Origin: Octopus bimaculoides
Taxonomy: Eukaryota
Assembly: GCF_001194135.2 (NCBI RefSeq)
Contig: NC_069004.1
Location: forward strand, 30,093,875 to 30,131,529
DNA length: 37,655 bases
Reading direction: 5' to 3'
Of this stretch, positions 1 to 37,655 are shown piece after piece (position 1 is the first letter of the stretch; every line of letters begins with the position of its first letter). The position numbers and the translations under genes are program-made. The notes under the pieces were generated by a model. It did not search any database. It worked only from the letters and a program-made list of their open reading frames with translations, and had not been told where the DNA came from.

Positions 1-77
1 GAGAAATGGATAATGCAGTACAAAGTGGATTTGGGAAAAGTGGGCAGAATGTGTGTGTGTGTGTGTGTGTGTGTGTG

Positions 78-470
78 TTCTTTTATTCTTTTACTTGTTT
101 CAGTCATTTGACTGCGGCCATGCTGGAGCACTGCCTTGAAGGGATTTAGTCAAACAAGTCAACCTGAAGACATATTTTTTAAAAGTCTAGTACTTATATT
201 CTATCAGTCTCTTTTGCCAAACTGCTAGGCTACGGGGACATAAACACACCAGCATCAATTGTCAAGTGATGATGGGTGGGGGGAGGGGCAAACAGACACA
301 CACGCACACACATAAATATATACATATATATGCAATGGGCTTCTTTCTGCTTAGGCAGTTTCTGTCTATGAAATCCACTCACATGGCTTTGGTCAGCCTG
401 AGGCTATAGTAGAAGACACTTGCCAAAGGTGCCATGCAGTGGGACTGAACCTGGAACCATGTGTGGAACC
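78..470 (-). mobile_element. tRNA-derived SINE family A (CORE-like, octopus OR-type), near full length
   Basis: Shares GGCACCTTGGGCAAGTGTCTTCTACTATAGCC and the 3' end CAGTCAAATGACTGAAACAAGTAAAAG with many other copies in the window. Confidence 0.8.
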
Positions 471-772
471 ACACAACCACACCAATAATTATTTTCAGGA
501 TCCAATAGAATTGAGGCATCTTAATAACAAAGACACCAACGTCGGATGGAGGATAACGTACCTGTGTACAAACAGTGTGTATGAACACTCAGGTACTTGC
601 GAAAGCATCTATGGATTTGTCCTTCCAGTTACGCATACATCCACAAATATAGACCAAATACACTCAATGTATATGTAAAATCACACAAGGATATACCCCA
701 GCGTGCAGTCCATGGTCCACTGTAGGCTCAAGGTTCAATGCAGTGGAGACTCCGAGTATAGTGTAGTATAAA

Positions 773-915
773 TCATCATCATTTACTGTCTGCTTTCCAT
801 GCTGGCATGGGTTGGACAGTTTGACTGGAACTGGTAAGCTAGACAGCTGTACCAGGTCCAGTCTGAATTTGGCTTCGTTTCTATGGCTAGATGCCCTTCC
901 TAATGCCAACCACTG
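773..915 (-). mobile_element. RTE 3' tail fragment
   Basis: (CAT)n..TTTCCATGCTGGCATGGGTTGGAC..GATGCCCTTCCTAATGCCAACCAC, shared with 19748-19960. Confidence 0.7.
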
Positions 916-1144
916 ACAGTTTCATATGTGCTTTTATGTGCCACATTATCATAATTTCTATTGCTATATGTTATATTTTAATAATTACTGATATTTTATA
1001 TATTATATATGTAAAGCATATGTCATATATGTATATATATATATTGATATAATTGTCCTTTTAGTAAATAAATAAATTGACATAATATAATGTCTAAAAG
1101 TTGATGAATACCACCCATTAATCCCCTCCATTTTCTTATTGCTT

Positions 1145-1185
<41 letters not shown>

Positions 1186-1434
1186 NNNNNNNNNNCTCTC
1201 TCTCTCTATATATATATATATATTCGAAGCGCCGGGGTTTTAATGGTGGCAGCTGATGAAGGAGATGTTTCTATGTGGCCTGCTTGTTTGTTGTACCTTG
1301 TTTATCATTTTGTCCATGTTCTTTTGCCACGTCATGTACCCAGATATGTATCTATAAGTACATGTGGACGAAGGTATATACATACATGTACATATATATG
1401 CATATACTCATATATTGTTTATATATATATACAT

Positions 1435-1532
1435 ACGATGGGCTTCTTTCAGTTTCCGTCTACCAAATCCACTCACAAAGCGTTGGTTGGCCCGAGGCTA
1501 TAGTAGAAGACACTTGCCCAAGGTGACATGCA
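1435..1532 (-). mobile_element. SINE family A, partial
   Basis: GGGCTTCTTTCAGTTTCCGTCTACCAAATCCACTCAC block. Confidence 0.75.
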
Positions 1533-1609
1533 ATATATATGAAAAAACAAAATGCAAAAAAAAAAACAAAAAAAAAAACAAAAGAAAGAAAACCAACCAA
1601 GCTACTTAC

Positions 1610-1826
1610 TTACAGGCGGACGCCTTGCTTCCACCGAGCATCATAGAGAAACATACGCCGCCATTGAGACAAGATGTACTTGAAATTTGCTCCTCTGTAC
1701 AGTTGAATCTGTTTGGAGGTACAGGTTTAAATGTGGTGGAGGAGGAGGAGGAGGAGGAAGAGACAGTGGCGGCGGTTGTGGATTTGCTGGGATCCAATGG
1801 TCTCGGAGATTTACGACTGCAGGCAT
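1610..1826 (-). CDS. Internal exon of the Spitz/Keren-like ligand: ACSRKSPRP motif, Ser/Thr stalk and first four Cys of the EGF domain
   Basis: Acceptor CACACAG at the end of a long pyrimidine tract. 217 nt = 2 + 71 codons + 2, reading ACSRKSPRPLDPSKSTTAATVSSSSSSSSTTFKPVPPNRFNCTEEQISSTSCLNGGVCFSMMLGGSKASAC-K. Donor AA|GTAAGT. CLNGGxC motif, and the intron falls between Cys4 and Cys5 as is typical of EGFR ligands. Confidence 0.9.
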
Positions 1827-1831
1827 CTGTG

Positions 1832-2260
1832 TGAGAGAGAGAGAGAGGAGGAAAGTGAGAGAGATATGAGGAGGAGGAGAGAGAGAGATATGAGGAGGAG
1901 AGAGAGAGAGATATGAGGAGGAGAGAGAGATATGAGGAGGAGAGAGAAAGAGATATGAGGAGGAGGAGAGAGAGATATGAGGAGGAGAGAGAGAGATATG
2001 AGGAGGAGAGAGAGAGATATGAGGAGGAGAGAGAGAGATATGAGGAGGAGAGAGAGAGATATGAGGAGGAGAGAGAGAGATACGAGGAGAGAGAGAGAGA
2101 GATATATGAGGAGGTGAGAGAGAGATATGAGGAGGAGAGAGAGAGATATGAGGAGGAGAGAGAGAGAGAGAGATATATGAGGAGAGAGAGAGAGATGAAG
2201 AGAGAGAGATGAAGAGAGAGAGATATGGGGAGAGGGAGAGATACGGGGAGAGAGATGAGA
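1832..2260 (+). repeat. Purine-rich minisatellite (GAGGAGGAGAGAGAGAGATAT)n, unit about 19-23 bp
   Basis: About 17 GATATGAGGAG-type units, directly visible. Confidence 0.9.
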
Positions 2261-3274
2261 GAGAGAAGAGCAAGAAATAAGGGAATTAAAGAAATGAGAG
2301 GGAGAGAGAAAGAAGGGAGTGATGAGAGGGAGAGAGAGAGAGAGAGAGAGGAAGTAGAGAGAAGGGGAAAAGAGAGACTGGAAAGAGAAACAGAAACAGG
2401 GTGAGATGATAAAGGAGTAAGATTGAAATGAGAGAGGGGGAGAAAGTGAAAGTAAGAGGGCAATAAGGGAAGGAGAGAAATGAGAGAGAAAAGGTAAGAG
2501 TGAAGGAAAGAGACTAGAAAGAGAGAGAGAGAGAGGATGAAGAGAAGATGAAAGGTTAAGAGAGATGAAGTGGTGAGATATAGAAAATATAGAGAATATA
2601 AAATGAGAAATAAAACACGGAAATTCTATAAAAGTAAATATATTTTTTATGGTTTTAGGAAATTTCGCCGGAAACATCTTTGCCATAAAAGATTTTGCCA
2701 TTTGGACAATAATAAAGCAATTTATACCAACACTTTTTAAAATAAAAAGGAAAAGAAATAATAAAAGGTTTTATAAACAGCGTTAAATAGGTAAGTCTTT
2801 ATTCAATGTGAAACATTAAAAAAAAATGTGAGGATGTAATTTAAAAAAGCATGAAAACTCCAAATTTACAGCAAATTTTTCCAGGGCAAAAATGTTTACG
2901 GCAAATTTTTCAGATATGATTTTTTTTAAAGGTAAGTGAGAACTAGAAACAAAATATTGAAAACAAAGCAACCTGCGGATTTATTCATTTTGATAGCATT
3001 GTAGATTTCTATCCTTTCATTTTGAAAATCCCCCTCCTGAAAACTCAAACTTTTTGAGAGCTGGTTCAATAGGATTAATGACCTGGGTGTTTTATAACAA
3101 TCATGAATGTTAAGAAGTCTCTTTTATACTGGGATTTCTTCAGAATTAAAAAAATGGTATCCTGTTATTTGACGTTTTTGTGGGCAGTTTTGTAGTAGTT
3201 GAGAATACAGAGCTCACTAGATTATTTCTCCTAGATTCTTTTAAGAGGCATACACATAACTACACTCAGACACA

Positions 3275-3390
3275 CTCTGGGTTCAGTCCCACTGCGTGGC
3301 ACCTTGGGCAAGTGTCTTCTACCATAGCCTCGGGCCGACCAAAGCGTTGTGAGTGGATTTGGTAGACGGAAACTGAAAAGAAGCCCGTCG

Positions 3391-3427
<37 letters not shown>

Positions 3428-3645
3428 ATATGTTTGTGTGTGTGTGTTTGTCACACCCAACATCGCTTGACAGCTGATGCTGGTGTGTTTACGTCCCTGT
3501 AACTTAGCGGTTTGGCAAAATAGACCGATAGAATAAGCACTAGGCTTCTAAAGAATAAGTCCTGGGGTCGATTTGCTCGACTAAAGACGGTGCCCCAGCT
3601 TGGCCGCAGTCAAATGACTGAAACAAGTAAAAGAGTAAAAGAGTA
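3275..3645 (+). mobile_element. SINE family A with internal (TA)n(TG)n
   Basis: GGTTCAGTCCC B-box-like motif, core and GTAAAAGA tail. Confidence 0.85.
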
Positions 3646-3967
3646 TAGAGGTATCGATTCGAGTCCCATGCATATGGAAAACCCACATTTTTCCGTCAAG
3701 GGCTTATATGCCCCCAATATTAGACTAGGATCTTTTTTAAAACGGGGGCCACATTTTTCATTAACGAAACACTTTGAAACTTGGAACACTGGTAGAATGT
3801 GTCATATAAAACATCTTTTTCTCTTAGTCTTCTTAAAAAAAAAAAGAAATCCATAAATTATTCCATGTTAAAGTTGTCGTATTTCTGTAATTTCAACCAA
3901 TCACTGACGTCCATTCAGCCGATATACATTAAGTGTCGACTACATAAACAAACGATTCTGAAACAAT

Positions 3968-4018
3968 TAACCCTAACCCTAACTCTAACCCTAACCGTAA
4001 GGTTAGGGTTAGGGTTAA
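3968..4018. repeat. Telomere-type (TAACCC)n joined to inverted (GGTTAG)n at the end of a dispersed-repeat-like segment
   Basis: TAACCCTAACCCTAACTCTAACCCTAACCGTAAGGTTAGGGTTAGGGTTA. Confidence 0.8.
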
Positions 4019-4062
4019 AGCAAATTTAAAATGAAAAAAGCAAATAAAATGAAGGTATGGAG

Positions 4063-5029
4063 NNNNNNNNNNNNNNNNNNNNNNNNNNNNNNNNNNNNNN
4101 NNNNNNNNNNNNNNNNNNNNNNNNNNNNNNNNNNNNNNNNNNNNNNNNNNNNNNNNNNNNNNNNNNNNNNNNNNNNNNNNNNNNNNNNNNNNNNNNNNNN
4201 NNNNNNNNNNNNNNNNNNNNNNNNNNNNNNNNNNNNNNNNNNNNNNNNNNNNNNNNNNNNNNNNNNNNNNNNNNNNNNNNNNNNNNNNNNNNNNNNNNNN
4301 NNNNNNNNNNNNNNNNNNNNNNNNNNNNNNNNNNNNNNNNNNNNNNNNNNNNNNNNNNNNNNNNNNNNNNNNNNNNNNNNNNNNNNNNNNNNNNNNNNNN
4401 NNNNNNNNNNNNNNNNNNNNNNNNNNNNNNNNNNNNNNNNNNNNNNNNNNNNNNNNNNNNNNNNNNNNNNNNNNNNNNNNNNNNNNNNNNNNNNNNNNNN
4501 NNNNNNNNNNNNNNNNNNNNNNNNNNNNNNNNNNNNNNNNNNNNNNNNNNNNNNNNNNNNNNNNNNNNNNNNNNNNNNNNNNNNNNNNNNNNNNNNNNNN
4601 NNNNNNNNNNNNNNNNNNNNNNNNNNNNNNNNNNNNNNNNNNNNNNNNNNNNNNNNNNNNNNNNNNNNNNNNNNNNNNNNNNNNNNNNNNNNNNNNNNNN
4701 NNNNNNNNNNNNNNNNNNNNNNNNNNNNNNNNNNNNNNNNNNNNNNNNNNNNNNNNNNNNNNNNNNNNNNNNNNNNNNNNNNNNNNNNNNNNNNNNNNNN
4801 NNNNNNNNNNNNNNNNNNNNNNNNNNNNNNNNNNNNNNNNNNNNNNNNNNNNNNNNNNNNNNNNNNNNNNNNNNNNNNNNNNNNNNNNNNNNNNNNNNNN
4901 NNNNNNNNNNNNNNNNNNNNNNNNNNNNNNNNNNNNNNNNNNNNNNNNNNNNNNNNNNNNNNNNNNNNNNNNNNNNNNNNNNNNNNNNNNNNNNNNNNNN
5001 NNNNNNNNNNNNNNNNNNNNNNNNNNNNN
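4063..5029. other. Assembly gap (largest)
   Basis: N run. Other gaps: 1186-1195, 5472-5899, 12326-12843, 15525-15542, 16334-16858, 18511-18520, 21754-21838, 33517-33720, 35791-35883. Confidence 1.
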
Positions 5030-5899
5030 ACTAATGTCCCCCCCCCATACCGCCCTTAAACACACACAACTACAGACCCTTACAAACACACCCCCTCTGT
5101 CTAACACCACTGATGCTACAACCAATACTGTTGTTGCCACTGTGTCTATTTGTCAGGTAAATTGACAAACAGATCTCAGTAAGTCCACAGCAAGGAACCA
5201 GGAATTTCAAATCTTTTATTTAATCCACCTAAGAGGATAGTGTTAATCTGCTGAATAATCACAACAGCACAAACACTACCACCACCACCACTACTACTAT
5301 CATTAATAACAGCAGAAGTACCACAATTACCACCACCACCACCACTGACACCAACAGTAGTCATCCCTACCATCACTGTCACCACCACCACCACCACAAC
5401 CATCACTGTCACCACCACCACCACCACCACCACAACCATCACTGTCACCACCACCACCACCACCACCACAANNNNNNNNNNNNNNNNNNNNNNNNNNNNN
5501 NNNNNNNNNNNNNNNNNNNNNNNNNNNNNNNNNNNNNNNNNNNNNNNNNNNNNNNNNNNNNNNNNNNNNNNNNNNNNNNNNNNNNNNNNNNNNNNNNNNN
5601 NNNNNNNNNNNNNNNNNNNNNNNNNNNNNNNNNNNNNNNNNNNNNNNNNNNNNNNNNNNNNNNNNNNNNNNNNNNNNNNNNNNNNNNNNNNNNNNNNNNN
5701 NNNNNNNNNNNNNNNNNNNNNNNNNNNNNNNNNNNNNNNNNNNNNNNNNNNNNNNNNNNNNNNNNNNNNNNNNNNNNNNNNNNNNNNNNNNNNNNNNNNN
5801 NNNNNNNNNNNNNNNNNNNNNNNNNNNNNNNNNNNNNNNNNNNNNNNNNNNNNNNNNNNNNNNNNNNNNNNNNNNNNNNNNNNNNNNNNNNNNNNNNNN

Positions 5900-6216
5900 C
5901 CCAGGACTTATTCTTTGGAAGCCTAGTACTTATTTTATCGGTCTCTTTTGCCGAACCGCTAATTTACGGGGACGTAAACACACCACCATCGGTTGTCAAG
6001 CAATGTTGGGGGATAAACACAGACACACAAACATACACACATACATACATACATACATATATACGACGGGCTTCTTTTCAGTTTCCGTCTACCAAATCCA
6101 CTCACAAGGCTTTGGTCGGCCCGAGGCTATAGTGGAAGACACTTGCCCAAGGTGCCACGCAGTGGGAATGAACCCGGAACCATGTGGCTGGTAAGCAAGC
6201 TACTTACCACACAGCC
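5900..6216 (-). mobile_element. SINE family A
   Basis: Reverse complement of the family A consensus, from the gap edge to the head. Confidence 0.8.
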
Positions 6217-7289
6217 AAAGCAAGATTTATTTATGATCAGAGGTGTTTTTAAACCAAGGTACAACTTTATTAGATGAATATGAGAAAGACAGGAGATAAA
6301 GCACAATATATTCGTGATCAGAGTTGTCCAAAAACCGAGGTACTACTGTATTAGGATAATCAAGGGTTCATTGTATAACAGAGTAGAGCGCATAAGAATG
6401 GCCCAAATCTGCAACCCTCAGTCTACTTGTACATTCTACTTGTACATTCACACCCCCATAGTTGGTGGTGGGGTTTAACAGTCACACAGTCTCCTTTTAT
6501 CACCCTCTAAGCCATTTCTCTTTTATTCATACAATCTCTATATATCACTCTCGCAGTCTCTTTTCCCCCCACATAGTCTCTCACTCTATCATACAAACAC
6601 CTACAGTGTATGAATGCATGCACACACACTTTCACAAAGTGTCTCATTCACACAGAGTTCCTCCTCCCCTCTCTCTTTCATACAAACACATACAGTGGGC
6701 TCACACACACATACATACACACAGTCTTTTCTCCTCTCTCTTTTTCATACAAACGCACTACAGGCACACATGCGCACACACACACACACACACATAAAAT
6801 ACTACAACGCTAACCCCAAGAATACATCTTCACAACACCACTGCCACCAGTACACTACTGCAACGCTACCACAACAACAACAGTACAATACCATCCGATT
6901 CTTATTCTGTCTTTAAACAACAACAACATCCCAAGTCTAAAAAACAAAAAAAAAACAGTAGCAAGAAGACACTATATTTCCCCTGCCCCATATACACAGT
7001 CTGAGAATTACTGGTATATTCTCCTTGGGGTGGGGGTGGGCAGTTTTAATGACTGCCCCATCCCCACTCTTGCTTGTTCCTACCAACTGGTACCTTCCTC
7101 AAACACACACACACCTGTTACCTTGGAAATATATTTGATGAGAAATGAAAAATTTGAAAGTATTTTTGTTAAGAAATGACTGTAGGTTGGGGAGGGGGAT
7201 ATAGGCTCGGTCTCTCTCCCTTTCACACAGTCACTCACTTACACACACACAGCCCCTCTCTCTCTCTTTCACATAATCCCTCTCTTGTC

Positions 7290-7496
7290 TGTGAAAGAGA
7301 GAAAGGGATTGTGTGTGAAAGAGAGAGGGAGTGTGTGAGAGAGAGGTATTGTGTGTGAAGGAGAGAGAGGTATTGTGTTTGAGAGAGAGAGAGACAGAGG
7401 ATTGTGTGTGAGAGAGAGAGAGAAGGATTGTGTGTGAGAGAGAGAGAGAAGGATTGTGTGTGAGAGAGAGAAGGATTGTGTGTGAGAGAGAGAAGG

Positions 7497-7538
<42 letters not shown>

Positions 7539-7580
7539 ATTGCGTGTGAGAGAGAGAGAGGGATTGTGTGTGAAAGAATG
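7290..7580 (+). repeat. Minisatellite (GA)n-AGGATTGTGTGT, unit about 20-26 bp
   Basis: About 10 GGATTGTGTGTGA units. Confidence 0.85.
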
Positions 7581-7825
7581 AGTATGTGAGAGTGAAAGAG
7601 AGGGAGAATGAAAGAGAATGAAACAATAAAAGTGAGGTTGAAAAAGAGAGAGAAAGACAAAGAGAGAGCGAGGAAGTAGGTGAAAAGTGATAGGGTGAAA
7701 GAGAAAAAGAGAGAATGAATGAGAGGGAGTAAAAGAGAAAAAAGAAATGAGAAAGGTTTGTCAGGTAGGGAGAAGGAGTTATTTGAAATCCTGACCACTC
7801 TGTAACCAGTAGTAGTAGTACTTAC

Positions 7826-7883
7826 CGACAAAACTTTGAAATGCTAATCCAAGAATAAATAGCACGGTAAACAGAAGTTGCAT
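7826..7883 (-). CDS. Signal-peptide coding exon of a Spitz/Keren-like EGF-family ligand (copy 1); encodes MQLLFTVLFILGLAFQSFV plus 1 nt
   Basis: Minus strand: pyrimidine tract ending TTTCCAG, exon starts 7962, ATG at 7883, 19 hydrophobic codons, then G|GTAAGT donor (phase 1). Joins in phase to the exon at 1826 (G+AT = Asp), giving a V-D-A|C cleavage site. Confidence 0.85.
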
Positions 7884-7962
7884 AATTTGGTGGTGATTTT
7901 GATATTGGGTAGATTTGCCTCCGTTTGTAATCCAGAGTTGTTGGCCTTGATCATTTGAGATC
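7884..7962 (-). other. 5' UTR part of the copy-1 signal-peptide exon, with an out-of-frame upstream ATG at 7954
   Basis: Lies between the acceptor AG (7963-7964) and the ATG at 7883. The acceptor implies a further upstream exon. Confidence 0.65.
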
Positions 7963-8174
7963 CTGGAAAGGAGAAGAAGAAGAACAAGGGTTAAGAGAGT
8001 AGAATGAGAGGGGGAGAGAGAGAGAGTGACAGACAGACAGAGGAGGGCTGGAAGAAAGTAAGAAAGATATGTAACTAGATGAAGATAGATTGAAAGAGAG
8101 AGAGAGAGAAATAAAGATAGAAAGACACATATGTATAAAGAAACAAATGATGAAGGAAAAAGGTAGAAAGACAC

Positions 8175-8332
8175 AGGCGTGGCTGTGTGGTAAGTAGCTT
8201 GTTTACCAACCACATGGTCCCCTGTGTTCAGTCCCACTGTGTGGCACCTTGGGCAAGTGTCTTCTACTATAGCCTCGGGCCGGCCAAAGCCTTGTGAGTG
8301 GATTTGGTAGACGGAAACTGAAAGAAGCTGGT
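8175..8332 (+). mobile_element. SINE family A, 5' half
   Basis: GGCTGTGTGGTAAGTAGCTTG head, ends at GAAAGAAGC..TCG. Confidence 0.8.
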
Positions 8333-8335
8333 CGA

Positions 8336-8505
8336 ATCATCATCATCATCGTTTAACGTCCACTTTCCATGCTGGCATGGGTTGGACGGATTGACTGAGC
8401 GCTGGCAAGCCAGAAGGCTGCACCAGGCTTCAATCTGATCTGGCAAAGTTTCTACAGCTGGATGCCCTTCCTAACGCCAACCACTCTGAGAGTGTAGTGG
8501 GTGCT
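8336..8505 (-). mobile_element. RTE 3' tail fragment
   Basis: Same tail family with a (CAT)n end. Confidence 0.75.
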
Positions 8506-15900: not shown

Positions 15901-17414
15901 CTCTGTGTCACTGAGTTAAATATCTACCTCTTCTTTTCTAGGTCGATGGCTTGGTTCCCCCACCCCCCTGCATCTTTTGCTCTCTTGTGGATCTTGTGAC
16001 TGAAAATAAAGTAGCAGTTGACAAGTACAATGTGGTGGGAATGTAGTGGGTGTGAGAAAGGGGAGGGGGTACGCAAGTGGGCAGTGATTGATACATAATA
16101 ATTGAGTGTAGAAACACCTTTGATGATAATGATGATGATGATGATGATGATAACAGTGGGAGGCTGTGGAGATATGGCAGTGGTAGTGGTTGTGGTGCTC
16201 CAGCATGGCAATAATCCAATCACTGACTGCCAGAAACAAAAAGGGGGCGGAAAGAAAACAAGAAAATCCTGGAATAAATGAATACAGAAAGAGAATGAGA
16301 GAGAGAGAGAGAGAGAGGGGAGAGAGAGAGAGANNNNNNNNNNNNNNNNNNNNNNNNNNNNNNNNNNNNNNNNNNNNNNNNNNNNNNNNNNNNNNNNNNN
16401 NNNNNNNNNNNNNNNNNNNNNNNNNNNNNNNNNNNNNNNNNNNNNNNNNNNNNNNNNNNNNNNNNNNNNNNNNNNNNNNNNNNNNNNNNNNNNNNNNNNN
16501 NNNNNNNNNNNNNNNNNNNNNNNNNNNNNNNNNNNNNNNNNNNNNNNNNNNNNNNNNNNNNNNNNNNNNNNNNNNNNNNNNNNNNNNNNNNNNNNNNNNN
16601 NNNNNNNNNNNNNNNNNNNNNNNNNNNNNNNNNNNNNNNNNNNNNNNNNNNNNNNNNNNNNNNNNNNNNNNNNNNNNNNNNNNNNNNNNNNNNNNNNNNN
16701 NNNNNNNNNNNNNNNNNNNNNNNNNNNNNNNNNNNNNNNNNNNNNNNNNNNNNNNNNNNNNNNNNNNNNNNNNNNNNNNNNNNNNNNNNNNNNNNNNNNN
16801 NNNNNNNNNNNNNNNNNNNNNNNNNNNNNNNNNNNNNNNNNNNNNNNNNNNNNNNNNNACTAGCTGTTACCTTTACCTTGTTTGATTAAGGGGTGTAGAC
16901 AAGGAGGGTGGTTGGGTGTGTGGTGGTGGTGGTGGTAGTGGATGTTGTCAGAGGTGGCGGAAGGAAGGAGGTGGAGTTAGGGACGAGGAGGGGTGAGGTG
17001 CGAGGAGGTTCGGGTAAGGGGATGGCGTGAGGACTGGAGGGAGTTGGGGAAAAAAAAAAAAAGGTGGCGACTGAGATGGAAATAAATATGTAATAAAGTA
17101 ATATAAGATATACACAAAATAATAATAATGATAATAATAAGGGACCCACCTGCTGCTCCTAACAGCATTCTCTCTTAGACTCTACTGTTATAAACAGACT
17201 TAGGTATGGAATCAGAAAAATATTATAAAGATATATATATATACACACACACACATAAACGCACACACACATATATATATACACATATACAGATCTATAT
17301 ACACATATACACACACATATATACACACACACACACTGCTAGAGCAGTGCCTTTAGTTTAGATCTTATCATATTCTATTATTCTATGTTAATTTAGTTAA
17401 TTGTAAGAGAATAT

Positions 17415-18045
17415 AGGCGCAGGAGTGGCTGTGTGGTAAGTAGCTTGCTTACCAACCACATGGTTCCAGGTTCAGTCCCACTGCATGGCACCTTGGGCAA
17501 GTGTCTTCTACTATATAGCCTCTGGCCGACCAAAGCCTGGTGAGTGGATTTGGTAGACTGAAACTGAAAAAGAAGCCCGTTGTATATATGTATATATATA
17601 TATGTGTGTGTTTGTGTGTCTGTGTTTGTCCCCCCCCCCCCACAACATCGCTTGACAACTGATGCTGGTGTGTTTACGTCCCCGTAACTTAGTGGTTCGG
17701 CAAAAGAGACCGATAGAATAAGTACTAGGCTGGGATTGATTTGCTCGGGCCGACCAAAGCCTTGTGAGTGGATTTGGTAGATGGAAACTGAAAGAAGCCC
17801 GTCATATATATGTATATATATGTGTGTGTGTGCATTTCTGTATCTGCGTTTGTCACCCCAACATCGCTTGACAACCGATGCTGCTGTGTTTACGTCCCTG
17901 TAACTTAACGGTTCGGCAAAAGAGACCGATAGAATAAGTACTAGGCTTACAAAGAATAAGTCCTGGAGTCGATCTGCTTGACTAAAGGCGGTGCTCCAGC
18001 ATGGCCGCAGTCAAATGACTGAAACAAGTAAAAGAGTAAAAGAGA
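17415..18045 (+). mobile_element. Two tandem SINE family A copies (second is 5'-truncated)
   Basis: Full head at about 17415; sequence restarts at GGGCCGACCAAAGCC near 17745; GTAAAAGA tail near 18040. Confidence 0.85.
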
Positions 18046-18433
18046 GAGAAATTTGAATGTAATGAAATGTTTTAAAAGAAACTTAAAGTGCCTACGTGAT
18101 AACTGTAAAACTATTTTTGGGGCCACCCTGTGTATATTATACGTATTGTATTTACACCAGCACTTCTAAGTGTGTATAAATGCACACAAATTATCGTTAT
18201 CTGTTTACTTTTATTTATGTATTTACTAACTGAATGGGATAACGAGCAAACTATTTGACAAGTATGAATTATCCATGTGACATTGAAATTGTCTGATTAT
18301 TTGTTCCAGAACCATCCCAGGAAATACTGTTATCAGCAGTATACAAAGTCACAACTCCTCAATCTGTAACTAGGTCGTTAAGTGCTAACATACGAAACTA
18401 CAGGCCCTTGAGTAACTCTGTTGCTTCTGCTAA

Positions 18434-30651: not shown

Positions 30652-30970
30652 GTATGGCTGTGTGGTAAGATACTTGCTTCCCAACCACATGGTTCCGGGT
30701 TCAGTCCCACGGAATAGCACCTTGGATAAGTGTCTTCTACTATAGCCTCGGGCAGACCAAAACCTTGCATGGATTTGGTAGGCAGAAACTGGAAAAAAGC
30801 CTGTCCTGTATGTACATAAATACATATGAATATATATATATGTGTGTGTGTGTGTGTATGTATGTGTGTCCCCCTGCGATTGCTTGACAGCCAATGCTGG
30901 TGTGTTTATGTCCCTGTAACTTAGCAGCTCAGCAAAAGTGATTGATAGAATAAGTACTAGGCTTACAAGG
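30652..30970 (+). mobile_element. SINE family A
   Basis: GGCTGTGTGGTAAG head, core and AGAATAAGTACTAGGCTT. Confidence 0.8.
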
Positions 30971-30982
30971 AATGTATGTGTG

Positions 30983-32675: not shown

Positions 32676-32678
<3 letters not shown>

Positions 32679-32848
32679 CTCTTTTACTTGTTTCAGTCAT
32701 TTGATTGCGGCCATGCTGGAGCACTGCCTTTGAGTCGAGCTAATCAACCCATGGACTTATTCTTTTTAAGCCTAGTACTTATTCTATCGGTCTCTTTAGC
32801 TGAACAGCTAAGTTACAGGGACGTAAACACACCAGCATCGGTTGTCAT
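32676..32848 (-). mobile_element. SINE family A, 3' half
   Basis: CTTTTACTTGTTTCAGTCATTTGA...ACACACCAGCATCGGTTGTCA. Confidence 0.75.
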
Positions 32849-37313: not shown

Positions 37314-37655
37314 ATCTCTCTTTCAATCTATCTCCCTTTAGTTACATATCTTTCTTACTCTCTTCCAGCCTTCCTCTCCCTCTCTCTCTCTCTCTCCTCC
37401 TCCACCTCTCATTCTACTCTCTTAACCCTTGTTCTTCTTCTTCTCCTTTCCAGGATCTCAAATGATCAAGGCCAACAACTCTGGATTACAAAACGGAGGC
37501 AAATCTACCCAATATCAAAATCACCACCAAATTATGCAACTTCTGTTTACCGTGCTATTTATTCTTGGATTAGCATTTCAAAGTTTTGTCGGTAAGTACT
37601 ACTACTACTACTGGTTACAGAGTGGTCAGGGTTTCAAATAACTCCTTCTCCCTAC
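37314..37655 (+). repeat. Right arm of the inverted segmental duplication (runs to the window end)
   Basis: Same alignment; homology is still unbroken at base 37655. Confidence 0.92.
37462..37591 (+). CDS. Signal-peptide exon of a second, inverted paralogue (copy 2); exon 37454-37591, in-frame ATGs at 37462 and 37534
   Basis: Acceptor TTTCCAG|G at 37453/37454 and donor G|GTAAGT at 37591/37592. The 58 coding nt from 37534 are identical to 7826-7883 reverse-complemented. Downstream exons would lie right of the window. Confidence 0.75.

What the first reader, a model, noticed from the sequence alone, without database searches (positions are those of the whole stretch)
1610..7883. Spitz/Keren-type EGFR ligand with a predicted N-terminal Cys (lipidation site) in a probable cephalopod
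Seen: the two exons splice in phase to MQLLFTVLFILGLAFQSFVDA|CSRKSPRP-(S/T stalk)-NC-x9-CLNGGVC-x12-CK. V(-3) and A(-1) predict signal cleavage just before Cys22. Known: Drosophila Spitz starts EA|CSSRTVPKPR, has an S/T stalk and C2-x5-C3-x12-C4 spacing, and is palmitoylated on that Cys by the MBOAT Rasp (HHAT family), which restricts its diffusion. Inference: the Hedgehog-like N-palmitoylation signature extends to a lophotrochozoan EGFR ligand, which would suggest a protostome-wide mechanism.
Basis: partly seen in the sequence, partly recalled or inferred. Interest (0 to 1): 0.7.

Follow-up and report, generated by a model that had tools for sequence, protein, structure and literature searches.

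The report
Octopus Spitz-like EGF ligand, N-terminal cysteine
The window holds the first two coding exons of an octopus membrane-anchored EGF-receptor ligand whose predicted mature end is a cysteine, the same feature that lets the fly ligand Spitz be fat-modified. The same cysteine occurs in snails, clams, a chiton and a ribbon worm, so this lipid tag on EGF ligands is probably much older than insects, though it has not been tested.

Summary
On the minus strand, exon 1 (7883-7826) and exon 2 (1826-1610) have good splice sites. They join in phase to give MQLL…SFVDA|CSRKSPRP–S/T stalk–C-x9-C-x5-C-x12-C-K. Both assembly gaps lie inside intron 1, and the scaffold is collinear with Octopus vulgaris across them.

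The window comes from another Octopus species. It stops about 15 nt before exon 3. The O. vulgaris orthologue (162 aa) completes the EGF module (…CKCPAKYTGLRC) and adds a transmembrane helix.

Relatives occur in cuttlefish, chiton, bivalves, gastropods and a nemertean. They share the [DE]-[AG]-Cys-[SG]-basic motif at the end of the signal peptide. Octopus, Solemya and Tubulanus also share two intron positions.

A profile of these proteins aligns with arthropod Spitz over 125 columns (E 1.5e-21), and the cysteine columns coincide. The EGF module alone is closer to neuregulin-1.

The N-terminus meets the published sequence rules for an HHAT substrate. Signal-peptide cleavage is predicted only weakly, and palmitoylation is an inference. 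The order of residues after the Cys is not significantly Spitz-like.

Verdict: a new member of a known kind, with a moderately interesting evolutionary implication.

The parts
7826..7883 (-). Coding part of exon 1: start codon and signal peptide MQLLFTVLFILGLAFQSFV, plus the first base of Asp20. The donor is GTCG|GTAAGT.
   Evidence: It is 58/58 identical to O. vulgaris exon 1. O. vulgaris model P0002 starts at the same Met.
7884..7962 (-). Probable 5' untranslated part of exon 1, downstream of an acceptor tttccag| (AG at 7964-7963). It carries an out-of-frame upstream ATG at 7954-7952.
   Evidence: Read directly. O. vulgaris model P0001 splices into the same acceptor. The UTR status is inferred.
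1827..7825 (-). Intron 1 (phase 1). It contains both assembly gaps (4063-5029, 5472-5899), SINE-like repeats, and a CT-rich 21-nt tandem array at 1833-2377 next to the acceptor.
   Evidence: It is collinear with the O. vulgaris intron of about 6.4 kb.
1610..1826 (-). Exon 2. It encodes (D)A-Cys22-SRKSPRP, the Ser/Thr/Pro stalk, and EGF cysteines C1-C4, and ends AA|GTAAGT (phase 2).
   Evidence: It is 207/220 identical to O. vulgaris.
1819..1821 (-). Codon TGC of Cys22, the predicted mature N-terminus and candidate acyl acceptor.
   Evidence: The column aligns with the Cys of arthropod Spitz and is conserved in 11 lophotrochozoan sequences.
1702..1818 (-). Basic/Pro motif SRKSPRP followed by the low-complexity Ser/Thr/Pro stalk (residues 23-61).
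   Evidence: This region is hypervariable in length and sequence among relatives.
1610..1701 (-). First half of the EGF module: C62-x9-C72-LNGGV-C78-x12-C91-K.
   Evidence: The second half, CPAKYTGLRC, is seen in the O. vulgaris orthologue.
1..1609 (-). Intron 2, nearly complete. By homology, exon 3 (C5-C6) begins about 15 nt beyond window position 1. The TM and tail exons lie further outside the window.
   Evidence: Searches show no exon here. Window position 1 corresponds to L001 45807, and O. vulgaris exon 3 follows …TTTCTGTCTTTACAG|ATGCCC.
37534..37591 (+). Second, inverted copy of the exon-1 coding sequence, 100% identical and with a GTAAGT donor. It sits inside a 341-nt duplicate (37315-37655, 94%) that runs off the right end of the window.
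   Evidence: Whether it is a real paralogue or an assembly artefact is not resolved.

Best explanation
The two exons are the 5' coding part of the octopus orthologue of a lophotrochozoan family of small type-I membrane EGF-receptor ligands. This family is the counterpart of arthropod Spitz.

Shown:
- The exons, their splice sites and purifying selection on them.
- A full-length orthologue in O. vulgaris with the layout signal peptide, Cys motif, S/T stalk, one six-Cys EGF module, short juxtamembrane segment, TM helix and short tail.
- Orthologues in four mollusc classes and a nemertean that share both intron positions, where the gene structure could be checked.
- Full-length profile homology to arthropod Spitz, with the Cys columns superposed.

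Inferred mechanism:
1. Signal peptidase cuts after Ala21 and exposes Cys22.
2. The octopus HHAT/Rasp orthologue N-palmitoylates Cys22 in the secretory pathway. The N-terminus C-S-R-K-S-P-R fits the published HHAT rules.
3. A rhomboid protease cuts at the top of the TM. The sequence R-L-R-I-A|G-I-A-A-G has P4 Leu, P1 Ala and P2' Ile, as in Spitz L-E-K-A|S-I-A-S-G.
4. The released ectodomain stays tethered to membranes by the lipid, which restricts its range and raises its local concentration at the EGFR, as in Drosophila.
For: Gene structure and conservation:
- Exons and splice sites.
- Selection on the exons.

Orthologues and architecture:
- O. vulgaris P0002 is 97% identical and has the full architecture.
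- The O. vulgaris exon map and the fact that the window ends just before exon 3.
- Cys motifs in relatives:
  - Acanthosepion DA|CGRKPARP
  - Solemya EA|CGRTPATP
  - Liolophura DA|CGKRPVRP
  - Tubulanus DC|CSRRS
  - Arion DG|CGRTPAR
  - Littorina DA|CGRTPAR
- Wherever the TM could be located, the ectodomain has 7 Cys (6 in the EGF module plus 1), which leaves one Cys unpaired.
- Octopus, Solemya and Tubulanus share a phase-1 intron in the −2 acidic codon and a phase-2 intron between C4 and C5.

Ligand class:
- A splice site between C4 and C5, plus an EGF module next to the TM, are the published criteria for ErbB ligands (PMC1618406).
- In the PDB profile search, ErbB ligands fill the top ranks, ahead of non-ligand EGF modules.

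Homology to Spitz:
- hhalign against an arthropod Spitz profile gives probability 99.4% and E 1.5e-21 over 125 columns, with DAC aligned to EAC.
- Against a single Drosophila Spitz the E-value is 1.3e-12, against 2.9e-7 for human proTGFα.

Lipidation and processing:
- Spitz Cys29 is the mature N-terminus and is palmitoylated by Rasp (PMC5875562; PMC8061759).
- The HHAT rules are an N-terminal Cys, residue 2 from G/S/A/P/Q, and a basic residue within the first 7. All are met.
- The rhomboid motif rules and the Spitz P1/P4 residues come from PMC2941825. The motif is conserved in the TM tops.
- A21|C22 is the top-ranked cleavage site.
Against: - No experiment or transcript from the source species supports the junction or the processing.
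- The cleavage prediction is weak. A21|C22 scores 7.4 against 7.2 (Q16|S17) and 6.6 (A14|F15).
- The order of residues after the Cys is not significantly similar to arthropod Spitz once composition is controlled (p≈0.09; p 0.03-0.7).
- The EGF module alone is closer to NRG1 than to Spitz.
- There are exceptions among relatives. Ostrea P0008 has no Cys at the aligned position. The cuttlefish-like transcript P0005 and Mya isoform X2 carry other first exons that would leave the Cys internal.
- The homologue searches included the N-terminal region, so they lean slightly towards sequences with the motif.
- No octopus HHAT or rhomboid was looked for here.
- The TM and the second EGF half are outside the window.
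Confidence: 0.6

Rival explanations
1. The gene is the same EGF ligand, but the signal peptide is cut elsewhere (after Gln16 or Ala14, or after Ser23). Cys22 would then be internal or removed. The conserved Cys would serve another role, such as an intermolecular disulfide for dimerisation or pairing with a partner protein, and would not be an N-acyl acceptor.
For: - Alternative cleavage sites score almost as well (7.2 and 6.6 against 7.4).
- In Solemya, Arion and Drosophila the matrix prefers a site 3-4 residues upstream of the Cys.
- An odd number of ectodomain cysteines fits a disulfide role just as well.
Against: - In Drosophila Spitz the same matrix also misranks the site, yet the mature protein starts at Cys29 and is palmitoylated there (PMC5875562).
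- The −1 small, −2 acidic and +2 Ser/Gly pattern is conserved around the Cys in about 20 sequences from three phyla. That fits a conserved cleavage and recognition site.
Confidence: 0.2
2. Cys22 is the mature N-terminus but is not lipidated in lophotrochozoans. The resemblance to Spitz would be an inherited signal-peptidase site plus a basic/Pro-rich linker, and use of the site by Rasp would have arisen only in arthropods.
For: - Residues after the Cys differ systematically: C-G-R-x-P in most molluscs against C-S-S-R-x-x-P-K-P-R in arthropods.
- Their order is not significantly alike.
- HHAT and Rasp differ in substrate tolerance (PMC8061759).
Against: - All published HHAT sequence rules are met.
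- The Cys is invariant across classes whose adjacent stalk is hypervariable. This implies selection on the Cys itself.
Confidence: 0.15
3. The gene is a neuregulin-type ligand rather than a Spitz-type one. It would be shed by ADAM or BACE-like proteases and signal as NRG1 does. The N-terminal Cys would be incidental.
For: - The best solved-structure matches are NRG1 EGF domains (E 9.7e-10 against 8e-6 for Spitz).
- NCBI names the chiton orthologue 'pro-neuregulin-1-like'.
Against: - There is no Ig domain and no neuregulin cytoplasmic domain in any member (Pfam).
- Full-length homology, including the juxtamembrane segment and the TM top, is to Spitz.
- The TM top keeps the Spitz rhomboid recognition pattern.
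Confidence: 0.05

Closest known systems
Drosophila/arthropod Spitz (with Keren and Gurken): TGFα-like EGFR ligands cleaved by Rhomboid and N-palmitoylated by Rasp
   Same: - The architecture is the same: signal peptide, Cys, stalk, single EGF, TM and a short tail.
- The Cys lies at the same aligned column, preceded by [DE]-[AGS] and followed by S/G and a basic residue.
- The C2-x5-C3-x12-C4-x-C5-x8-C6 spacing is the same.
- The TM-top pattern A-x-I-A-x-G with P4 hydrophobic and P1 Ala is shared.
- Profile homology is E 1.5e-21.
   Different: - C1-C2 is x9 rather than x8.
- The EGF sequence is nearer to NRG1.
- The post-Cys motif is C-[SG]-R-K/T-x-P… rather than the invariant arthropod C-S-S-R-x-x-P-K-P-R.
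- The arthropod block RPNITF before C1 is absent.
- The gene has introns before the Cys and between C4 and C5, whereas the fly, mite and thrips coding regions examined have none.
- Lipidation and rhomboid cleavage are untested.
Vertebrate neuregulin-1 EGF domain
   Same: It is the highest-scoring solved relative of the EGF module. The pattern C-x-C-[LV]-NGG-x-CF…C-x-CP-x-x-[FY]-TG-x-RC is shared. The C4/C5 splice site is also shared.
   Different: - There is no Ig domain and no neuregulin cytoplasmic domain.
- The protein is far smaller.
- NRG1 has no N-terminal Cys. No vertebrate EGFR ligand has one, according to PMC8061759.
Vertebrate pro-TGFα
   Same: It is also a small type-I precursor with one EGF module next to the TM and a C4/C5 splice site. 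Several lophotrochozoan orthologues end in [ST]-x-V, as TGFα ends in TVV (the TGFα sequence is from memory).
   Different: Homology is weaker and limited to the EGF module (E 2.9e-7). TGFα has no N-terminal Cys and is shed by ADAM17 rather than by rhomboid.
Hedgehog N-terminus (CGPGRG…) as HHAT substrate
   Same: It shares an N-terminal Cys exposed by signal peptidase, a small second residue, and a basic residue within the first seven.
   Different: The protein is unrelated. There is no Hint domain or cholesterol modification. Whether the mollusc enzyme accepts C-S-R-K is unknown.

Membership tests
ErbB/EGFR ligand (criteria of Stein & Staros 2006) | Splice site between the 4th and 5th cysteine of the EGF module | tested here: met
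   The window has the donor TGT AA|GTAAGT right after C4-K. O. vulgaris exon 3 starts A TGC (C5). Solemya and Tubulanus have the same phase-2 intron. The criterion is from PMC1618406.
ErbB/EGFR ligand (criteria of Stein & Staros 2006) | Six-Cys EGF module close to a TM domain, with Arg before C6 | tested here: met
   This is met in the O. vulgaris orthologue, 97% identical: …CKCPAKYTGLRCEALAFHPVKDYTRLRIAGIAAG…. The TM starts about 17 residues after C6. Only C1-C4 lie inside the window.
ErbB/EGFR ligand | Binds and activates an EGFR/ErbB receptor | not testable with these tools
   Only sequence ranking is available. ErbB ligands are the top PDB matches, ahead of Notch, uPA and factor IX EGF modules.
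Spitz-type ligand (Spitz/Keren/Gurken) | Full-length sequence homology to Spitz | tested here: met
   hhalign of the lophotrochozoan profile against the arthropod Spitz profile gives probability 99.4% and E 1.5e-21 over 125 columns. Against a single Drosophila Spitz the E-value is 1.3e-12. Caveat: the hydrophobic signal peptide and TM segments inflate such scores.
Spitz-type ligand (Spitz/Keren/Gurken) | EGF module most similar to Spitz among known ligands | tested here: not met
   NRG1 EGF scores higher than Spitz EGF: 41.6 against 28.9 bits with the profile and 29.3 against 18.9 bits with the single sequence.
Spitz-type ligand (Spitz/Keren/Gurken) | Cys as first residue of the mature protein after signal-peptide cleavage | tested here: inconclusive
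The Cys column aligns with Spitz Cys29. SignalP was not available.
Spitz-type ligand (Spitz/Keren/Gurken) | Rhomboid recognition motif at the top of the TM (P1 small, P4 large hydrophobic, P2' hydrophobic) | tested here: met
   O. vulgaris has L-R-I-A|G-I, and the relatives follow the same pattern. The rules and the Spitz residues A138 and L135 are from PMC2941825. Cleavage itself was not tested, and the TM exon is outside the window.
HHAT/Rasp substrate | N-terminal Cys, residue 2 from G/S/A/P/Q (not K), and a basic residue within the first 7 | tested here: met
   C-S-R-K-S-P-R has Ser at position 2 and Arg3, Lys4 and Arg7. The rules are from PMC8061759. This depends on cleavage occurring before Cys22.
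HHAT/Rasp substrate | Cys-dependent N-palmitoylation by the enzyme | not testable with these tools
   This needs metabolic labelling or mass spectrometry.
Neuregulin / Vein type | Ig-like domain N-terminal to the EGF module and/or a neuregulin cytoplasmic domain | tested here: not met
   Pfam scans of seven family members found neither domain. The proteins are 160-270 aa long and have only an S/T stalk before the EGF module.

The most novel reading that the evidence does not exclude
N-terminal palmitoylation of a Spitz-like EGFR ligand by HHAT would date back at least to the protostome ancestor and so would not be a fly peculiarity. The phase-1 intron placed exactly before the Ala-Cys codons would make the lipid tag switchable. 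Alternative first exons occur in a cuttlefish-like transcript and in Mya isoform X2. They would yield isoforms whose Cys is buried and cannot be acylated, giving long-range and short-range forms of one ligand from one gene.
Probability: 0.3. Interest if true: 0.65.

Novelty: new member of a known kind. Interest (0 to 1): 0.45.

Why it matters
Palmitoylation of an EGFR ligand is known only from Drosophila Spitz, and is presumed for Keren and Gurken. The 2021 HHAT review treats it as a fly-specific second job of Rasp. It notes that no vertebrate EGFR ligand has an N-terminal Cys.

The acceptor Cys, its cleavage context, an HHAT-compatible N-terminus and the rhomboid-type TM top are all retained here in cephalopods, gastropods, bivalves, a chiton and a nemertean. 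This suggests that the module of a lipid-tethered, rhomboid-released EGF ligand is ancestral to protostomes, and that HHAT has had at least two substrate families for more than 500 million years.

The finding gives a concrete, testable candidate in octopus, and it gives a consistent identity to proteins that databases now call 'hypothetical', 'pro-neuregulin-1-like', 'probetacellulin-like' or 'gurken-like'. The papers I could search do not mention this conservation. The Miura et al. 2006 paper itself could not be read.

Tried and rejected
- Looked for exon 3 inside the window (1-1609, minus strand, all three frames). None is there; by homology the window ends about 15 nt short of it.
- Ran Pfam on the 92-aa window product. 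There was no EGF hit, only a sub-threshold Trefoil match that I regard as noise. Even the full-length members stay just below the EGF gathering score.
- The word-indexed protein search was insensitive for this family. The first search missed a 97%-identical protein, and the second was swamped by low-complexity candidates. Cutting out the S/T linker helped.
- Tried to use intron positions to link arthropod Spitz with the mollusc genes. The fly, mite and thrips coding regions are single-exon, so they are uninformative. The beetle loci were unavailable.
- Looked up contigs for P0001, P0009, P0010, P0019 and P0024; none is on record.
- Tested whether the residues after the Cys resemble arthropod Spitz beyond composition. 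A fixed-register permutation gave p≈0.09. Gapped shuffles gave p 0.03 for Octopus and Littorina and were non-significant for seven others. I therefore dropped the claim of a specific 'CSRKSPRP = CSSRTVPKPR' match.
It is not decisive, because it ranks the known Drosophila site second.
- Rejected the pseudogene or chance-ORF reading, because the exons are 94-100% identical and the introns about 74%.
- Treated O. vulgaris P0001 (129 aa, ending ACK*) as an annotation artefact or intron-retention form. Its first exon lies in a TG/TA microsatellite, and its stop codon is the TAA inside the intron-2 donor.
- Miura et al. 2006 is not held in the library.

Full report
**What is in the sequence.** On the minus strand the window reads ATGCAACTT…TTTGTCG|GTAAGT at 7883-7826, and …ctctcacacag|ATGCCTGCAGTCGT… from 1826 downwards. 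Joining the two gives a phase-1 junction (G|AT = Asp20). The product is MQLLFTVLFILGLAFQSFVDACSRKSPRPLDPSKSTTAATVSSSSSSSSTTFKPVPPNRFNCTEEQISSTSCLNGGVCFSMMLGGSKASACK. Exon 2 ends TGT AA|GTAAGT, which is a phase-2 donor. If left unspliced, the frame stops at once (AAG TAA).

**The gaps.** The window has ten runs of N. The two flagged ones, 4063-5029 and 5472-5899, lie inside intron 1 (1827-7825), so no reading frame crosses them. Order and orientation across them hold up against Octopus vulgaris:
- window 2896-3105 = L001 39006-38797
- window 5030-5457 = L001 37302-36858
- window 6296-7714 = L001 35790-34346

The distances are similar in the two species. The O. vulgaris gene model has no coding exon between exons 1 and 2.

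**Source and completeness.** The best protein hits are two products of one O. vulgaris gene on chromosome OX597837.1.
- P0002 (162 aa, 97% identical) starts at the same Met, has the same SFVDACSRK junction, and continues …SACKCPAKYTGLRCEALAFHPVKDYTRLRIAGIAAGITSCILVLILVMCVIFVYIKYRDHTPLMPTNSQNVHD.
- P0001 (129 aa) stops at ACK*, that is, it reads into intron 2. Its first exon lies in a TG/TA microsatellite. I regard it as an artefact or an intron-retention form.

The whole left two-thirds of the window is collinear, in reverse orientation, with this locus at 70-95% nucleotide identity. The window therefore comes from a different Octopus species.

O. vulgaris has five coding exons spread over about 51 kb. 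Window position 1 corresponds to L001 45807, and exon 3 begins after …TTTCTGTCTTTACAG| at about L001 45822. The window thus stops about 15 nt short of exon 3. It contains only the signal peptide, the Cys motif, the stalk and EGF cysteines C1-C4. No exon 3 is hidden in 1-1609.

Exon 1 is 58/58 and exon 2 is 207/220 identical to O. vulgaris, against about 74% in the flanking introns. The substitutions in the Cys motif and in the EGF part are all synonymous. The exons are therefore under purifying selection.

**The family.** An exhaustive HMMER search with the 92-aa product, and a profile search with the low-complexity linker removed, found small proteins of the same build. Sources and names are; sequences are.
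- Acanthosepion pharaonis
- Solemya velum
- Mya arenaria
- Ostrea edulis
- Liolophura sinensis
- Arion vulgaris
- Littorina saxatilis
- the nemertean Tubulanus polymorphus
- several transcript-like Logan contigs

Database names for these proteins are inconsistent: hypothetical, 'pro-neuregulin-1-like', 'probetacellulin-like' and 'gurken-like'.

Aligned on the cysteine, the sequences read:
- Octopus: FVDA|CSRKSPRP
- Acanthosepion: FVDA|CGRKPARP
- Solemya: VSEA|CGRTPATP
- Liolophura: TTDA|CGKRPVRP
- Tubulanus: FVDC|CSRRSS
- Arion: TSDG|CGRTPART
- Littorina: FVDA|CGRTPART
- arthropod Spitz, from Drosophila ironensis, beetles, a thrips and a mite: [DE]-[AGS]|CSSR-x-x-PKPR

Wherever the TM could be located, the ectodomain has seven cysteines, six in the EGF module plus this one.

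**Gene structure.** Octopus (the window and O. vulgaris), the bivalve Solemya and the nemertean Tubulanus share two introns.
- A phase-1 intron splits the codon of the acidic residue at −2 (G|AT, G|AG, G|AC), so the Ala/Cys-Cys codons open exon 2.
- A phase-2 intron lies in the single codon between C4 and C5.

This is strong evidence of orthology within Lophotrochozoa. A splice site between C4 and C5, together with an EGF module next to the TM, is the published criterion that separates ErbB ligands from other EGF modules (PMC1618406). The window itself shows that donor. The arthropod genes I could fetch (fly, mite, thrips) are single-exon from signal peptide to TM, so introns cannot link the two phyla.

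**Spitz, neuregulin or TGFα?**
- The EGF module is closest to NRG1 among solved structures. The single sequence gives NRG1 7.8e-6 and Spitz 0.012. The lophotrochozoan profile gives NRG1 9.7e-10, heregulin-α 1.5e-7, Spitz 8e-6 and EGF 1.4e-4, with non-ligand EGF modules at 4e-3 or weaker. By contrast, an arthropod Spitz profile ranks EGF and TGFα ahead of heregulin.
- No family member has an Ig domain or a neuregulin cytoplasmic domain.
- Over the full length, the lophotrochozoan profile aligns with the arthropod Spitz profile at probability 99.4% and E 1.5e-21 over 125 columns. The alignment runs from the end of the signal peptide, with DAC on EAC, through the EGF and juxtamembrane segments into the TM.
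- In like-for-like controls, a single Drosophila Spitz gives E 1.3e-12 and covers EGF, juxtamembrane and TM. Hydrophobic segments inflate such scores, so I read this as clear homology to Spitz, not as a precise phylogeny.
- The top of the TM is specifically Spitz-like. Compare L-R-I-A|G-I-A-A-G (Octopus), L-R-T-A|G-I-A-A-G, L-R-T-A|H-I-A-A-G and M-K-T-A|N-V-A-A-G with L-E-[KT]-A|S-I-A-[SG]-G in arthropods. This fits the rhomboid recognition motif of P1 small, P4 large hydrophobic and P2' hydrophobic, with Spitz P1 Ala138 and P4 Leu135 (PMC2941825).

**The cysteine as a lipidation site.** Spitz Cys29 is the first residue of the mature protein and is N-palmitoylated by Rasp. The C29S mutant begins at Ser29 (PMC5875562; PMC8061759). 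The published HHAT rules are a free N-terminal Cys, residue 2 from G/S/A/P/Q but not K, and a basic residue within the first seven. C-S-R-K-S-P-R satisfies them all.

Whether Cys22 really is the N-terminus depends on signal peptidase.
- A21|C22 is the best site (7.4), but Q16|S17 (7.2) and A14|F15 (6.6) are close.
- The same matrix ranks the experimentally known Drosophila site second, so it cannot decide the matter.
- The x|Cys site is top-ranked in nine of the 24 sequences scored (23 proteins plus the window product) and second in several others.

The stronger argument is comparative. The Cys, the small −1 residue, the acidic −2 residue and the S/G at +2 are kept across three phyla, next to a stalk that is hypervariable in length and sequence.

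**What is not supported.** The eye-catching likeness of CSRKSPRP to CSSRTVPKPR is largely compositional. With the Cys fixed, permuting columns gives p≈0.09. Gapped alignments against shuffles give p=0.03 for Octopus and Littorina, and 0.14-0.73 for the other seven taxa.

There are also exceptions among the relatives.
- Ostrea P0008 has His where the Cys should be, and it lacks a TM.
- A cuttlefish-like transcript (P0005) joins a different first exon to the same acceptor (…KGSK|NACGRK). Its predicted cleavage is 16 residues upstream of the Cys.
- Mya isoform X2 carries a Cys-rich extension before NG-CGRV.

These may be mispredictions. They may also be real isoforms in which the Cys is not N-terminal.

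**Mechanism proposed.** The shown parts are the gene structure, its conservation, the family and its homology to Spitz. The inferred steps are these:
1. Cleavage after Ala21.
2. N-palmitoylation of Cys22 by the octopus HHAT orthologue.
3. Rhomboid cleavage at the top of the TM.
4. A lipid-tethered EGF ligand with short range.

No step of the processing was or could be tested here, and I did not search for octopus HHAT or rhomboid.

**Novelty.** Barberán et al. 2016 surveyed EGF ligands across Metazoa. That paper does not mention palmitoylation or octopus. The HHAT review treats Spitz, Keren and Gurken as the only such ligands. My literature searches found nothing on conservation of this Cys outside flies. 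Miura et al. 2006 could not be read.

I rate the finding as a new member of a known kind. The gene fragment itself is ordinary. The implication, that lipid-tagged Spitz-type ligands are ancestral to protostomes, is moderately interesting and directly testable.

Noticed in passing
window 37315-37655 (+), exon copy at 37534-37591: There is an inverted second copy of the exon-1 region, 94% identical over 341 nt. Its coding part and GTAAGT donor are 100% identical. It runs off the right end of the window, about 29.6 kb from the first copy. It could be the first exon of a head-to-head paralogue or an assembly artefact. In Acanthosepion two adjacent accessions (CAE1282271 and CAE1282272) are both family members, which hints at neighbouring paralogues in cephalopods.
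   Followed up: partly
window 1-120 (-): By homology with O. vulgaris, the window ends about 15 nt before the acceptor of exon 3 (…CCATTTCTC | TTTCTGTCTTTACAG|ATGCCCTGC…). Intron 2 is about 1.6 kb here against about 5.5 kb in O. vulgaris.
   Followed up: yes
window 1833-2377: A long tandem array with a 21-nt unit (GAGAGAGAGAGATATGAGGAG on the + strand, CT-rich on the gene strand) abuts the exon-2 acceptor and forms a polypyrimidine tract of about 500 nt. The region is also alignable to O. vulgaris.
   Followed up: partly
window 7952-7954 (-): There is an out-of-frame upstream ATG in the presumed 5' UTR part of exon 1. Its short reading frame overlaps the main start codon at 7883. This may dampen translation, but it was not examined further.
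   Followed up: no
L001 10001-10030 and 40305-40310 (O. vulgaris): The O. vulgaris model P0001 (129 aa) begins in a TG/TA microsatellite and ends at the TAA inside the intron-2 donor. It is probably an annotation artefact or an intron-retention isoform lacking C5, C6 and the TM.
   Followed up: partly
relatives P0005 (cuttlefish-like Logan transcript) and P0026 (Mya arenaria isoform X2): These carry alternative first exons spliced to the same acceptor just before the Ala/Gly-Cys codons. They would leave the conserved Cys internal. This may be a switch between forms that can and cannot be lipidated.
   Followed up: no
C-termini of P0006, P0009, P0010/P0013, P0023, P0024 and of the beetle Spitz proteins: Many family members end in [ST]-x-V (TKV, ESV, TTV, TDV, TNV, SRV, REV), which looks like a class-I PDZ-binding tail of the kind in pro-TGFα. 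The O. vulgaris model ends …NVHD instead, so its last exon may be incomplete or divergent.
   Followed up: no
window 64-463, 3276-3647, 5900-6217, 8174-8337, 17411-18046, 30655-30973, 32677-32847 and others: There are many copies of a SINE-like element of about 300-370 nt (…GGCAAGTGTCTTCTACTATAGCCTCGGGCC…). They match dozens of places in the O. vulgaris locus at 75-92%. The rest of the window (8.4-37.3 kb) is repeat-rich and microsatellite-rich DNA with no convincing coding ORF.
   Followed up: partly
L002, L003, L005 (Drosophila ironensis, Panonychus citri, Megalurothrips usitatus): In these three arthropods the Spitz coding region from signal peptide to TM is a single exon. The literature, in contrast, reports the C4/C5 splice site in some non-Drosophila Spitz genes, so intron loss appears to be patchy in arthropods.
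   Followed up: partly
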